Virus record (IMG/VR): IMGVR_UViG_3300020172_001601
Span: 62,001 to 126,000 of that record
Direction: 5' to 3' (one strand)
Length of the DNA stretch: 64,000 nucleotides
Shown: piece after piece, positions 13,662-63,915 of the stretch
How positions within the stretch are numbered: the first letter of the stretch is position 1
Layout of the letters: each line of letters begins with the position of its first letter
The notes under the pieces: model-generated
Databases searched by the model: none
Seen by the model: only the letters and a program-made list of their open reading frames with translations
Told to the model about the DNA's origin: nothing
Made by a program: the position numbers and the translations under genes

Positions 13662-13738
13662 GAGGTTGTGTTCGTCTAGTGGTCTAGGATGCCGTCGTTG
13701 AAGACGGCGACATGGGTTCAAATCCCATACACAATCTC
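13662..13738 (+). ncRNA. Glu-like tRNA body with 6-nt anticodon loop
   Basis: CCGTC-GTTGAA-GACGG; extended acceptor GAGGTTGTGT/ACACAATCTC. Confidence 0.65.
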
Positions 13739-13835: not shown

Positions 13836-13906
13836 GATTCGGGTTAGTGTAACGGTAGCACGGAGCCGTCAAAGGCTCCAGAGTGGTTCGACTCCACACC
13901 CTTATC
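13836..13906 (+). ncRNA. tRNA-like RNA, short anticodon loop (TAGTGTAACGGTAGCACG family)
   Basis: GGAGCC-GTCAAA-GGCTCC; T arm present. Confidence 0.6.
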
Positions 13907-13913
13907 ACAATAT

Positions 13914-23296: not shown

Positions 23297-24124
23297 ATGG
23301 CAGTCAATCTTGGTCCCCTCGGTCCTTCTGGTCCTCCAGGTTTACTTGGTCCTGTTGGAGTTGATCCAACATGGTATCAACCTTGTCGTGGGGCCGAAGA
23401 TGGCGGCTATACAATTCGCATCTGCCCGCCATTGAAGGGCAGAAAGTTTTGCTTGCGAACTCGCAATCATCGAGTTGGCAGCAAGACGTTTCAATGTCAC
23501 AAAGAGGTCGTTGACAATAAATGGCAAGGCGAATGTGCCATTTGCGATCAATATAGCAAGTTGTGGAAAGAGTATTTGGGCGATGGCTTTGAAATGCTGT
23601 CTTCTACTCCTATGTCCAAGCCAAGATTCTTCCCAGGAAGTCTCGAAGACTTTAAGCGTGAACTCACCGCAATTAAACCCAACGAACGATATTACTTCAA
23701 CATTATTGTTCGTGACGAAGAAGAACGTGGCGTTGTTAAATGGTCCTGCGGCAAGACCATATACACCAAAATCCTTGAAGGCATTGTGGGAAACGAAAGC
23801 AACCCAAATGTGCCTCGGCTTGGTGATATAACCGATCCCAAAAAGGGATATGATCTGCATATCCGAAAGATTGCAAAGAATGGCGGTGGCTCTCACGGGT
23901 GGCCAGATTATTCTGCTTCTCAGTTCTTGCCATCTACGCCGCTGGGTAAACCTAAACAAATCAAATTGTGGTTATCGCAATTGCATGATTTGTCTGCGTT
24001 GCGTATATTGTCTTCTAAGGAGAGCATGGAATCTGCTCTCGAAGACGTGTTTGGGCATCTCGGTGCTGTGAACCCAAAACAAAAATATCGCTCTCTGACC
24101 GACCCATTTGAACCAGCGTGGTAA
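23297..24124 (+). CDS. T4 gp32-like single-stranded DNA-binding protein
   Basis: IRICPP, H/C/CAIC Zn site, RYYFNI, GKTIY, DPKKGYDL, PDYSAS. Confidence 0.75.
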   Translation: MAVNLGPLGPSGPPGLLGPVGVDPTWYQPCRGAEDGGYTIRICPPLKGRKFCLRTRNHRVGSKTFQCHKEVVDNKWQGECAICDQYSKLWKEYLGDGFEMLSSTPMSKPRFFPGSLEDFKRELTAIKPNERYYFNIIVRDEEERGVVKWSCGKTIYTKILEGIVGNESNPNVPRLGDITDPKKGYDLHIRKIAKNGGGSHGWPDYSASQFLPSTPLGKPKQIKLWLSQLHDLSALRILSSKESMESALEDVFGHLGAVNPKQKYRSLTDPFEPAW

Positions 24125-27388: not shown

Positions 27389-27727
27389 ATGAAATATGAA
27401 AAGATGGAAAACTTGCGACCCTGGGAAAAGAATCCTAAACAATATCTGTTATGCAGAAAGCATAGCATGGTGTTCTTAGAGGGTTGGGAGTGTCCAGATT
27501 GTGAGCGGTCCCAGGCTCGAAACATATTCGATCCTTGGGAGCCGAGCGTTGAACAAGATCAACAAGAAGAAAACCACGACCCGCTCATTCTGAGTATGGT
27601 CGCAGCGGCAGCAGAAGAAAAGATTCCTATGCCGGGCGTTTACAAACTTGAAGTATGTCCTCTACACAACTTACAATATGTGGCGGGGCTAAATGAATGC
27701 CCGGAATGTAAATGTTGGGCCTCATGA
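27389..27727 (+). CDS. hypothetical protein with two CxxH..CPxC motifs
   Basis: CRKH..CPDC; CPLH..CPEC. Confidence 0.6.
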   Translation: MKYEKMENLRPWEKNPKQYLLCRKHSMVFLEGWECPDCERSQARNIFDPWEPSVEQDQQEENHDPLILSMVAAAAEEKIPMPGVYKLEVCPLHNLQYVAGLNECPECKCWAS

Positions 27728-27800: not shown

Positions 27801-28025
27801 ATGGAAAACTTCAAAGGCATATTGGCTGGAGTTGGAATAAACGACCTACAGATGTTAGGCCGAGCCGTCAGGCCCTTGAACAACAAGGACGTTACTTGGA
27901 ATGGCTCTCAATATTCCATCAATGCCTTTTTCGATCAATTTGGATACGAAACGCCGATTCATTTGACGATAAAGAAAAAGAAAAAGTATCGCTCGATTGA
28001 CGAACCGTTCGAGCCGAGTTGGTAA
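27801..28025 (+). CDS. small protein with shared C-terminal motif
   Basis: ends KKKKKYRSIDEPFEPSW. Confidence 0.6.
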   Translation: MENFKGILAGVGINDLQMLGRAVRPLNNKDVTWNGSQYSINAFFDQFGYETPIHLTIKKKKKYRSIDEPFEPSW

Positions 28026-62611: not shown

Positions 62612-62961
62612 TACGATCACTCCTTTATTATGTCTGAAAGATATAATGAACCAAGGAGTAAATCATGGACAAAGACTACGCAAAAGCTGTTTCCAACTTC
62701 GAGCAAGCGGGAGCGCACCTGGGAAACTTCGCCACATTATTGTTCACATATCATAAATCGCTATGTGAATCCGGCTTCCAGAGAGACGAAGCATTGGAAT
62801 TGGTGAGAGAACTCCAGACGACCTTATTTGCACAGGCTTTTAATTTCGGCCCACAACCGAGTCAAGATGATGACGACTAAAGTAATCATTGTTAAGCCAG
62901 AAAGATTTGCAGGAACGGTCGCTGTTTATAGGCGACCGTTTTTCGTTACCGGAGCAATACA

Positions 62962-63219
62962 ATGAGTGACTGTGAAGTAGCCCAATTCAAAAGAATAAGC
63001 ATTCCTTTGATGAGGAGGATATATCCTCAGCTTATTGCCAACCAGATATGCAGTGTTCAGCCATTGGCTGGCCCAACTGGTTTAGTGCATTATTTGCGAT
63101 ATAAATATTCTGAGAACAAGGGTGGCATCATCAACACTGATGGCTGGACCATCAAACCCAAGAAGAAAAAGATTTGGCGTGACATCAACGATCCGTGGGA
63201 GCCTTCTAGCAATGGCTAA
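62962..63219 (+). CDS. mini-protein homologous to a segment of T4-like major capsid protein gp23
   Basis: IPLMRRIYPQLIANQICSVQPLAGPTGLVHYLRYKY. Confidence 0.75.
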   Translation: MSDCEVAQFKRISIPLMRRIYPQLIANQICSVQPLAGPTGLVHYLRYKYSENKGGIINTDGWTIKPKKKKIWRDINDPWEPSSNG

Positions 63220-63466
63220 GAATATATGGTATCGTATACGCAAGACGCTTGGGATGTTGTCCTATGAGGAACGTCGCCTTGAATCGACTGAGTGGGCAAG
63301 GAACTCGATCAGGGCGCAAATGATACATCCTGATGTTGTTTTGGACGCATCCAAGATTACAAAGGGGGCCGAGAATATTCCCGGTCCTCAACCCGTTCCC
63401 AAAAAAGAGAAAGTGCGGCCCAGGTCAATTCTCGAAGATTGGGAAGTAACCCAAGATTCGGGCTGA
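63212..63466 (+). CDS. hypothetical protein with C-terminal motif variant
   Basis: KKEKVRPRSILEDWE. Confidence 0.55.
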   Translation: MAKNIWYRIRKTLGMLSYEERRLESTEWARNSIRAQMIHPDVVLDASKITKGAENIPGPQPVPKKEKVRPRSILEDWEVTQDSG

Positions 63467-63510: not shown

Positions 63511-63915
63511 ATGGCAGTAAAGCAAGTTATCGTTTGGCGACACGATTTGGGTTGTCGAGTCGGGAAGAAGATGTCGCAAGCGGGTCATGCTGCTTTGGCC
63601 GACTTGTCGAACACGATTCGTGACAATGTTGATGCCGAAGGTAATGTATCGTTCAAGCTGTCGCCTGCACAGTTTGAGTGGTATTTGACGAACTTCCGCA
63701 AGATCGTTCTCCGTGTTGACAGTGAGGCCGACCTGTTGCTTCTGTACCATCGGGCGCAGGAAGTGGGGTTGCCGACTGAACTCATCATCGACAGCGGTTT
63801 GACGGAATGGGATCAGCCCACAAAGACTTGCATCGCTATCGGGCCAGCAGAAGATGCCGAGATTGACGAGATCACTGGCGAACGTGGCCCTTTGGGAAGA
63901 TTGAAGTTGATGTGA
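63511..63915 (+). CDS. peptidyl-tRNA hydrolase, Pth2 type
   Basis: KQVIVWRHDL..GKKMSQAGHA, RKIVL, IIDSGLTE, TCIAIGP. Confidence 0.9.
   Translation: MAVKQVIVWRHDLGCRVGKKMSQAGHAALADLSNTIRDNVDAEGNVSFKLSPAQFEWYLTNFRKIVLRVDSEADLLLLYHRAQEVGLPTELIIDSGLTEWDQPTKTCIAIGPAEDAEIDEITGERGPLGRLKLM

What the first reader, a model, noticed from the sequence alone, without database searches (positions are those of the whole stretch)
62962..63219. Stand-alone Gol-like capsid peptide gene
Seen: an 85-aa ORF with RBS containing ISIPLMRRIYPQLIANQICSVQPLAGPTG. Known (recalled): the T4 gp23 Gol peptide AVMGMVRRAIPNLIAFDICGVQPMNSPTG binds EF-Tu and triggers the Lit protease. Only this segment of the capsid protein is kept, fused to the shared C-terminal motif. 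Inference: a decoy for capsid-sensing immunity or a dedicated EF-Tu modulator, which fits a translation-control region.
Basis: partly seen in the sequence, partly recalled or inferred. Interest (0 to 1): 0.75.

Follow-up and report, generated by a model that had tools for sequence, protein, structure and literature searches.

The report
Capsid-derived Gol-like peptide gene with docking tail
A huge freshwater phage keeps a separate, well-conserved 85-residue gene made of the short "Gol" piece of its T4-type capsid protein (which binds host EF-Tu in T4) joined to a lysine-rich docking motif that the same phage clade also puts on its DNA-binding protein gp32 and other proteins; this looks like a new two-part adaptor, but what it binds is untested.

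Summary
The ORF at 62962..63219 (+) is real. Residues 6-56 match only positions 1-51 of Pfam Gp23 (E 5e-15), and residues 12-51 align to T4 gp23 94-133, the Gol region.

It is not a pseudogene:
- The flanks hold no other capsid remnants.
- About 35 intact homologues (66-124 aa) exist on contigs up to 602 kb.
- Synteny next to PTH2 is conserved.
- dN/dS is 0.24, and more distant pairs keep the protein despite saturated synonymous sites.

The N module copies the N-arm/Gol segment of the gp23-type capsid protein of related huge phages (78% identity). The C module (K-rich, then W-R-x-I-x-D-P-W-E-P-S) is a clade-specific linear motif. It also ends this clade's gp32-type SSB, an ATPase-only large-terminase paralogue and several small proteins. 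Homologues with the two modules in reverse order, or with only the Gol core, indicate two independent binding modules.

Best reading: a bipartite adaptor whose exposed Gol-like peptide binds EF-Tu (T4 precedent only) and whose tail docks to whatever recognises the SSB tail. EF-Tu binding is untested; the one complex prediction gave no answer. A simple Lit decoy is unlikely, because free Gol activates Lit.

The parts
62911..62948 (+). 13-bp GC-rich hairpin followed by UUUUU, terminator-like, between the upstream 71-aa ORF and the mini-gene
   Evidence: Fold of 62878-62965: -26.1 kcal/mol, z -3.8, 0 of 200 shuffles as stable. The consensus terminator scan did not list it.
62951..62954 (+). GGAG ribosome-binding site, 7 nt before the ATG
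   Evidence: Read directly from the sequence.
62962..63219 (+). Mini-gene, 85 aa (P0001): capsid N-arm/Gol module, variable linker, then lysine-rich docking motif
62986..63081 (+). N module, residues F9-G40 (FKRISIPLMRRIYPQLIANQICSVQPLAGPTG), equivalent to T4 gp23 ~91-122 (Gol). Family-invariant residues: F9 P15 Y21 P22 L24 I25 V32 Q33 P34 L35.
   Evidence: PDB alignment; family alignment A1; position-by-position comparison with 117 full-length capsid proteins.
63082..63153 (+). Residues 41-64: remnant of the first E-loop/I-linker strand (LVHYLRYKYS), then a variable linker with indels. One homologue (P0065) lacks this part entirely.
63154..63207 (+). C module, residues K65-S82 (KPKKKKIWRDINDPWEPS): the clade-wide linear motif K-rich + [WY]R[SDT][IL]x[DE][PDE][WF][ED]
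   Evidence: The copies differ at synonymous sites, so they are not a DNA repeat.
63212..63466 (+). 84-aa ORF whose start overlaps the mini-gene stop by 8 nt (ATGGCTAA). It ends in the motif variant KKEKVRPRSILEDWEVTQDSG. The overlap and the tail are conserved in relatives, but the body is not.
63511..63915 (+). Peptidyl-tRNA hydrolase PTH2, a conserved downstream neighbour
   Evidence: PF01981, E 1.4e-26; synteny.
23297..24124 (+). gp32-type ssDNA-binding protein whose extreme C-terminus is the same motif (KQKYRSLTDPFEPAW-COOH)
   Evidence: PF08804, E 1.8e-12; profile against PDB gp32 entries, E 6e-15; 18 of the 150 listed representatives, including most of the closest ones (227-270 aa, plus one 154-aa fragment), end in a motif-like tail; AF2 pLDDT 87.
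27801..28025 (+). 74-aa ORF between two tRNA genes, ending KKKKKYRSIDEPFEPSW-COOH (strongest independent motif copy, 34 bits)
27389..27727 (+). 112-aa ORF between tRNA genes with an internal motif copy (ARNIFDPWEPS)

Best explanation
The gene encodes a small, intrinsically unfolded two-module adaptor.

Shown:
- Module 1 (residues ~9-40) is a copy of the N-arm/Gol segment of the gp23-type major capsid protein of this group of huge phages.
- Module 2 (residues ~65-82) is a lysine-rich linear motif (W-R-x-I-x-D-P-W-E-P-S). In this clade the same motif forms the extreme C-terminal tail of the gp32-type SSB and is appended to an ATPase-only TerL paralogue, to membrane-anchored small proteins and to several other small proteins.
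- The gene is under purifying selection and keeps a conserved position.
- The two modules occur in either order in different homologues.

Inferred:
- In the folded capsid protein, part of module 1 is a structural strand. In a stand-alone peptide it is permanently exposed, as it is in nascent gp23.
- By the T4 precedent it binds host EF-Tu (domains II/III, GDP form) and damps its GTPase.
- Module 2 docks that complex onto the partner(s) that recognise the SSB tail, or onto the SSB core itself.
- The protein would thereby link or sequester a translation factor at a phage-defined hub, or occupy the capsid-binding site on EF-Tu before capsid synthesis starts.

The confidence given is for the whole mechanism including EF-Tu. 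That it is a real, selected, two-module capsid-derived protein I hold at about 0.9.
For: Homology to the Gol region.

The most reduced homologue (P0065, 66 aa) keeps only FKRISIPLVRRIYPQLIANKIVSVQPL, then an acidic linker and the motif. Another (P0067) has the motif first and the Gol core second. This indicates two separable binding modules. The minimal kept piece coincides with the peptide that suffices for EF-Tu binding in T4 (PMC3014915).

Residues invariant across the mini-proteins include V-Q-P-L, which lies in the part of gp23 that is ordered in the prohead shell (first modelled residue L106; PMC9546572). AF2 predicts no stable fold for the mini-protein (pLDDT 64, pTM 0.21). Their conservation is therefore best explained by direct partner contact.

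Selection and conservation: dN/dS 0.24 for own versus L002; protein identity of 45-65% is kept where synonymous sites are saturated; about 35 clusters of intact homologues; synteny MetRS ... mini / overlapping motif ORF / PTH2 / HNH ... RF-1 / RlaP in four divergent phages; tandem duplication in L104.

Motif as SSB tail. Motif on the TerL ATPase-only family (about 36 of the 53 listed homologues). On transmembrane-anchored proteins. Enrichment against shuffles, and 0 hits in 881 kb of other T4-like loci.

In T4, short C-terminal gp32 peptides recruit partners such as Dda (PMC11551737).
Against: - No direct evidence of EF-Tu binding. The host is unknown, and only 14 of 29 Gol positions are identical to T4.
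- The partner of the tail motif is unknown. An SSB-type tail points to DNA metabolism rather than translation, and why EF-Tu should be brought there is unexplained.
- The same tail on a TerL ATPase fragment fits a head-assembly or packaging role at least as well.
- The 'translation island' also holds the SSB, so gene neighbourhood is weak evidence.
- Expression is not shown: the one RNA run covers only the upstream ORF.
- The phage's own full-length capsid gene was not seen, because the record is about 69% complete and lacks the whole head module.
Confidence: 0.4

Rival explanations
1. Head-assembly or packaging adaptor. The N module acts as a free capsid N-arm that contacts scaffold, portal whiskers or neighbouring capsomers. 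Through the SSB-type tail it couples proheads or the portal to replicating, SSB-coated DNA, or it tunes capsid size. The TerL ATPase-only paralogue with the same tail would act in the same coupling.
For: In T4 the gp23 N-terminus up to L106 is flexible and lies inside the prohead, and probably touches the scaffold. A94V and G97S, which change head length, and Met98, which anchors the portal N-whisker, all lie inside the Gol stretch (PMC9546572). A second head-module fragment, the TerL ATPase domain, carries the same tail in about 36 of the 53 listed homologues. The mini-protein tracks the capsid-protein consensus position by position.
Against: The most conserved mini residues (VQPL and the LIA strand) lie in the part of gp23 that is ordered in the shell, not in the flexible N-terminal region. 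The gene sits far from any head gene, next to PTH2, in all relatives seen. P0065 keeps only about 27 capsid residues.
Confidence: 0.25
2. Anti-defence antagonist. An early-made capsid-epitope mimic occupies a host sensor that recognises the N-terminal part of gp23-type capsid proteins (Lit-like, CmdTAC-like, CapRel-like) without activating it. Alternatively it shields EF-Tu from a Lit-like protease.
For: gp23 is a recurrent trigger of abortive-infection systems: Lit (PMC3014915) and CmdTAC (PMC11618068). The fragment is exactly the known Lit-relevant epitope. The family is patchy, with about 35 clusters against more than 7,800 capsid-protein clusters, as accessory counter-defence genes often are.
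Against: For Lit, free Gol bound to EF-Tu is the activating cofactor. For CmdTAC, binding of capsid protein to the chaperone releases the toxin. A mimic would therefore trigger these systems rather than block them. The SSB-type tail has no role in this model. The sequence is strongly conserved rather than rapidly evolving.
Confidence: 0.12
3. Interference with co-infecting relatives. Truncated capsid and terminase fragments act as dominant-negative poisons of competitors' head assembly and packaging.
For: Two different head-module proteins occur as truncated, tail-tagged paralogues. The capsid-protein family is extremely conserved, about 80% identity across thousands of contigs, so a fragment would hit many relatives.
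Against: It would equally poison the phage's own near-identical capsid protein. No immunity mechanism is evident. The tail shared with the phage's own SSB is unexplained.
Confidence: 0.06
4. Non-functional remnant of a capsid gene, or a mis-called ORF.
For: It is short and matches only about 50 residues of a roughly 480-aa protein.
Against: There is no further capsid sequence in the flanks. Intact homologues span 45-89% identity with an ordered two-module architecture. dN/dS is 0.24. The RBS, the overlap with the next ORF and the synteny are all conserved.
Confidence: 0.02

Closest known systems
T4 gp23 Gol peptide (residues ~93-122), cofactor of Lit-mediated EF-Tu cleavage
   Same: Homologous segment: 14 of 29 identities, Pfam and PDB alignments. 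The minimal conserved core of the mini family coincides with the peptide that is sufficient for EF-Tu binding in T4.
   Different: In T4 it is only part of the 521-aa capsid protein, and no separate gene is known. Here it is an independent, selected gene fused to a second binding motif. Neither EF-Tu binding nor Lit activation has been tested.
gp23/gp24-type major capsid and vertex proteins (PF07068), including the 491-aa capsid protein of huge phage LR756511.1
   Same: The N module is 78% identical to residues 68-118 of that protein, and its consensus equals the capsid-protein consensus.
   Different: It lacks the I, P and A domains (model positions 52-376), so it cannot form a capsid shell. 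AF2 finds no stable fold.
C-terminal partner-docking tails of SSBs (T4 gp32 C-terminal region binding Dda; E. coli SSB-Ct DDDIPF)
   Same: The tail motif is the extreme C-terminus of this clade's gp32 homologues. More distant gp32 homologues carry an acidic D-D-F-M-x-E-L tail in the same place. Several unrelated proteins share the tail, as expected of a hub-docking motif.
   Different: The sequence is unlike any described SSB tail: a basic run, then W-R-x-I-x-D-P-[WF]-E-P-x-W. There is no PDB match, and the partner is unknown. The analogy to E. coli SSB-Ct rests on my own knowledge.
C-terminal clamp-binding peptides shared by T4/RB69 gp43, gp33 and gp55
   Same: The same logic: several proteins of one phage carry a similar short C-terminal peptide for one hub.
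   Different: This is a recalled analogy only. No clamp was sought or tested here, and the sequences are not alignable with confidence.

Membership tests
Gp23 major capsid protein family (PF07068) | Significant match to the family model | tested here: met
   E 5.2e-15, 56 bits against a cut-off of 24.4.
Gp23 major capsid protein family (PF07068) | Complete HK97-type body (I-linkers, P and A domains) able to build a shell | tested here: not met
   Only model positions 1-51 of 376 are present. The protein is 85 aa and AF2 finds no fold. It is a fragment-derived protein, not a capsid protein.
T4 Gol peptide | Sequence equivalent to gp23 residues 93-122 | tested here: met
   phmmer alignment to gp23 94-133, E about 3e-4, 14 of 29 identical.
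T4 Gol peptide | Binds EF-Tu domains II/III | tested here: inconclusive
   The single complex prediction with E. coli EF-Tu gave 'no answer', which counts neither for nor against. Biochemistry is needed.
T4 Gol peptide | Activates Lit protease to cleave EF-Tu | not testable with these tools
   No Lit homologue (PF10463) in the 340-kb record. The host is unknown.
SSB C-terminal docking-tail motifs | The motif forms the extreme C-terminus of the phage's SSB and is conserved there | tested here: met
   The gp32-like protein (PF08804) ends KQKYRSLTDPFEPAW. 18 of the 150 listed gp32-like representatives end in a motif-like tail.
SSB C-terminal docking-tail motifs | The same motif on the mini-protein, beyond chance | tested here: met
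   An HMM built from mini-protein tails scores the gp32 tail at 15.2 bits and a 74-aa ORF at 34.2 bits; the shuffle maximum is 11.3.
SSB C-terminal docking-tail motifs | Binds defined partner protein(s) | not tested
   The partner is unknown. The only hint is that the gp32-like tail has pLDDT 71-86 in the AF2 model, so it may be placed against the core.
Pseudogene or gene remnant | Degraded remainder of the gene in flanking frames, and relaxed selection | tested here: not met
   Next best tblastn hit in the flanks has E 0.45. dN/dS is 0.24 and intact homologues exist.

The most novel reading that the evidence does not exclude
A clade of huge freshwater phages has turned the EF-Tu-binding epitope of its own capsid protein into a free, constitutively exposed peptide. 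It wires this peptide, together with its SSB, a terminase ATPase paralogue, membrane anchors and other small proteins, into one hub through a previously undescribed shared docking motif. This would be a phage-built interaction network that physically links a host translation factor to the phage's DNA machinery.
Probability: 0.2. Interest if true: 0.85.

Novelty: new variant of a known kind. Interest (0 to 1): 0.68.

Why it matters
The Gol-EF-Tu contact has been known since the 1990s only as the trigger of one abortive-infection system, and why capsid proteins bind EF-Tu at all remains open. A natural, selected, stand-alone Gol-like peptide would be the first sign that phages use this contact on purpose. 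It is also a compact reagent of about 30 residues for testing that idea.

Independently, the shared lysine-rich W-R-x-I-x-D-P-W-E tail defines a clade-wide docking code whose hub is unknown. It appears on the SSB, a truncated terminase, membrane proteins and this peptide. Finding the hub would show how these huge phages organise replication, packaging and perhaps translation.

No GenBank phage among 50,697 records shows a second Gol-like locus, and I found no paper describing either feature.

Tried and rejected
- **Complex prediction, mini-protein with E. coli EF-Tu:** 'no answer' (score 0.00, controls not run). This is evidence neither for nor against binding.
- **AF2 of the mini-protein alone:** low confidence (pLDDT 64, pTM 0.21), so no fold search was run.
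- **Intron read-through or a small mobile DNA element as the source of the shared tail:** rejected. The tail-coding DNA differs at synonymous sites between copies, and nothing downstream continues the genes.
- **The tail as the return strand of the capsid E-loop (K-x-R-x-L-K-A-x-W-S):** the motif HMM gives no hit on the full-length capsid ORF.
- **The tail as a T4-type prohead-protease site ([LI]-x-E) or an M16 or C39 peptidase site:** considered only. P1 is often Asp, and no test was possible.
- **Phage-encoded EF-Tu-type GTPase (PF00009) or Lit (PF10463):** none in the 340-kb record.
- **Own full-length capsid, portal and terminase nuclease:** none in the record. The record is incomplete. 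A 390-kb ENA contig of the same phage and the 602-kb relative could not be searched whole. Matching contig lengths between the capsid-protein and mini-protein hit lists gave nothing within the 120 rows listed.
- **IMG/VR and JGI pattern scans for the tail:** few loci.
- **T4 late-promoter motif TATAAATA:** not informative. The sigma-70 and terminator scans were at chance level.
- **RNA evidence:** one metatranscriptome contig covers only 62664-62833, so expression of the mini-gene is not shown.
- **ESM Atlas:** only capsid-protein clusters.
- **PDB search with the tail:** nothing.

Full report
**Observation**

The window is bases 62,001-126,000 of a 340,341-bp IMG/VR virus record, estimated 69% complete. 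The same phage occurs as a 390,142-bp ENA contig and in many freshwater metagenomes.

ORF 62962..63219 (+) encodes 85 aa with a GGAG 7 nt upstream. A strong hairpin followed by a U-run lies just before it.

Residues 6-56 match Pfam Gp23 (E 5e-15), but only model positions 1-51 of 376. PHROG 138 (major head protein) matches likewise.

**Not a remnant**

tblastn with two full-length capsid proteins of relatives finds only this 51-61-residue piece. This holds for the 10 kb around it and for the whole record; the next best flank hit has E 0.45.

A search of 5.8 billion proteins returns about 35 clusters of intact small homologues. They are 66-124 aa, share 45-89% identity with the query, and lie on contigs up to 602 kb.

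Their alignment shows three parts:
- a strongly conserved N module (F-K-R-I-S-I-P-L-V-R-R-I-Y-P-Q-L-I-A-N-K-I-V-S-V-Q-P-L-x-G-P-T-G-L-x-x-Y-L-R);
- a variable linker with indels;
- a conserved C module (W-x-I-K-x-K-K-K-K-I-W-R-D-I-x-E-P-W-E-P-S).

dN/dS is 0.24 against the closest relative. More distant pairs have saturated synonymous sites yet keep the protein.

Gene order is kept in four divergent phages: MetRS, several small ORFs, the mini-gene, a small ORF overlapping its stop by 4-8 nt, PTH2, a ~165-aa ORF, HNH, then ArgRS or an RF-1-domain protein, then RlaP. One relative carries two tandem copies.

**Origin of the N module**

The 595-kb huge phage LR756511.1 has a T4-type head module (protease, scaffold, 491-aa gp23-like capsid protein). 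Residues 68-118 of that capsid protein are 78% identical to the mini-protein. It has no mini-gene.

That capsid family is very large and uniform: more than 7,800 clusters, about 80% identity among the best 120. The consensus of the mini-proteins equals its consensus position by position, only somewhat more variable. The module is therefore a copy of this phage group's own capsid N-arm/Gol segment.

The window's record contains no portal, terminase nuclease, protease, scaffold or capsid body. The whole head module probably lies in the missing third of the genome.

A related JGI contig carries both a complete T4-type head module and a tail-tagged terminase paralogue (described below) far from it. 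This shows that such fragments coexist with the intact module.

**The C module is a clade-wide linear motif**

In this genome the motif ends, or occurs in, these proteins:
- the gp32-type SSB (window 23297..24124; KQKYRSLTDPFEPAW-COOH);
- a 74-aa ORF and a 112-aa ORF that sit between tRNA genes;
- the 84-aa ORF overlapping the mini-gene;
- in shortened form, the ORF after PTH2;
- a 291-aa ATPase-only paralogue of the large terminase at genome position 296 kb;
- two further small ORFs.

The DNA copies differ at synonymous sites, so this is a peptide motif and not a repeat.

An HMM built only from mini-protein tails of other genomes recovers four other ORFs here at 12-34 bits, against 0.2 hits per shuffled proteome. 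A motif HMM that also included this genome's own copies found none at 10 bits or more in 881 kb of other T4-like capsid loci. In LR756511.1, the six sampled loci (about 28 kb) have none, and its gp32 homologue lacks the tail.

Three observations generalise it:
- About 36 of the 53 listed homologues of the truncated terminase end in K-K-L-W-R-S-I-W-D-E-W-D-type tails.
- 18 of the 150 listed gp32-like representatives (the own-clade ones, mostly 227-270 aa) end in a motif-like tail, typically ...K-Y-R-S-I-x-[DE]-P-F-E-P-[AS]-W-COOH. More distant gp32 homologues end instead in an acidic D-D-F-M-x-E-L tail like T4's.
- Another phage attaches the motif to two small proteins with an N-terminal transmembrane helix.

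The motif therefore sits where SSBs carry their partner-docking tail. T4 gp32 recruits Dda through a short C-terminal peptide (PMC11551737).

In the AF2 model of the gp32-like protein (pLDDT 87), the tail has pLDDT 71-86. This hints that it is placed against the core, but I could not inspect coordinates.

**Two independent modules**

One homologue (P0065, 66 aa) keeps only the ~27-residue Gol core, an acidic linker and the motif. Another (P0067) has the motif at the N-terminus and the Gol core behind it. AF2 finds no stable fold for the protein. The simplest reading is a flexible adaptor with two peptide-type binding sites.

**What the N module binds**

In T4, a 29-residue Gol peptide binds EF-Tu domains II/III, prefers the GDP form and inhibits the GTPase. 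Kleanthous and colleagues proposed that all gp23-type proteins bind their hosts' EF-Tu (PMC3014915).

In the capsid, residues before L106 are flexible and lie inside the prohead. They touch scaffold and portal, whereas the following residues belong to the ordered shell (PMC9546572). The mini family's invariant residues include V-Q-P-L and the L-I-A strand, which belong to that ordered part. In an unfolded peptide their conservation is best explained by direct contact with a partner that sees the unfolded segment. EF-Tu is the only such partner known.

I therefore favour EF-Tu binding, at about 0.4. A head-assembly or packaging role comes second, at about 0.25; it is supported by the tail-tagged terminase ATPase paralogue and by the length mutations and portal contact that lie inside the Gol stretch.

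A Lit-type decoy is unlikely, because free Gol activates Lit. CmdTAC is likewise triggered by capsid binding (PMC11618068).

The record encodes neither an EF-Tu-type GTPase nor a Lit homologue. The one complex prediction gave no answer.

**Novelty**

None of 1,234 matching GenBank phage records has a second Gol-like locus. IMG/VR holds only this record and one 78-kb relative. Literature searches found no description of a stand-alone Gol-like gene or of the tail motif.

I class it as a new variant of known kinds: a capsid Gol epitope plus an SSB-tail-type docking motif, in a new combination and with an unknown hub.

Noticed in passing
outside the window: own genome C1:296324-297199 (L093:6324-7199): A 291-aa paralogue of the T4-type large terminase that has only the ATPase domain (44% identical to residues 76-349 of a 633-aa TerL) and ends in the same docking motif (KKLWRSIWDEWD). 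No nuclease domain is found anywhere in the record. About 45 similar truncated proteins exist elsewhere, and about 36 of the 53 listed homologues carry the tail. It sits in conserved synteny with a C39 peptidase and a 380-aa protein with an HExxH motif.
   Followed up: partly
window 23297-24124: A gp32-type SSB whose C-terminal tail is the shared motif. The own-clade gp32 homologues (18 of the 150 listed representatives) end in a motif-like tail, typically ...KYRSIxDPFEP[AS]W. More distant ones have an acidic DDFMxEL tail instead.
   Followed up: yes
window 10800-39233: 49 tRNA genes, including two that ARAGORN calls with two-base anticodons (13664-13738, 13836-13908). Small motif-bearing ORFs (27389-27727, 27801-28025) are wedged exactly between tRNA genes.
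   Followed up: no
window 14480-60796, and the region just beyond the window end: A large translation island: TrpRS/TyrRS-like fragment (14480), Glu/GlnRS catalytic domain (39529), a class I Leu/Ile/Val-type synthetase (46672), MetRS (59147), PTH2 (63511), then ArgRS-like and RF-1-domain proteins downstream. It also holds a Ro60/TROVE-vWA protein (42332), an M16 peptidase next to gp32 (24607) and an SPFH protein (33255).
   Followed up: partly
L104:5729-6201 (Logan contig, 72.7 kb): Two mini-genes in tandem: a long form and a 66-aa short form that lacks the hairpin part. The short form is followed by a small ORF ending ...RWRSIDD.
   Followed up: partly
L109:3401-4126 (ERZ1066133 NODE-9, 161 kb): Two adjacent small proteins, each with an N-terminal transmembrane helix and the docking motif at the C-terminus (KKKPKWRSIDEPFEPQG; KKKGWRAIDEPFEPQ...).
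   Followed up: no
L087:10997-11506, the ORF after PTH2 (begins at window ~63958 and runs past the window end): A 169-aa ORF conserved after PTH2 that ends in a shortened motif (KPQRIWRYIDEE-COOH; KPQKIWRSITDE in a relative).
   Followed up: no
L102 (JGI Ga0502764_0000105): The T4-type portal gene of a related phage carries an intein, and a LAGLIDADG endonuclease gene follows the capsid gene. The head module of this group is a target of mobile elements.
   Followed up: no
window 62664-62833: The only piece of this region held by a freshwater metatranscriptome run is a 170-nt contig over the 71-aa ORF just upstream of the mini-gene. DNA carry-over cannot be excluded.
   Followed up: no
window 63100-63107: One of only three TATAAATA (T4 late-promoter-like) words in the 340-kb record lies inside the mini-gene, about 110 nt before the start of the overlapping ORF. 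This is probably chance.
   Followed up: no
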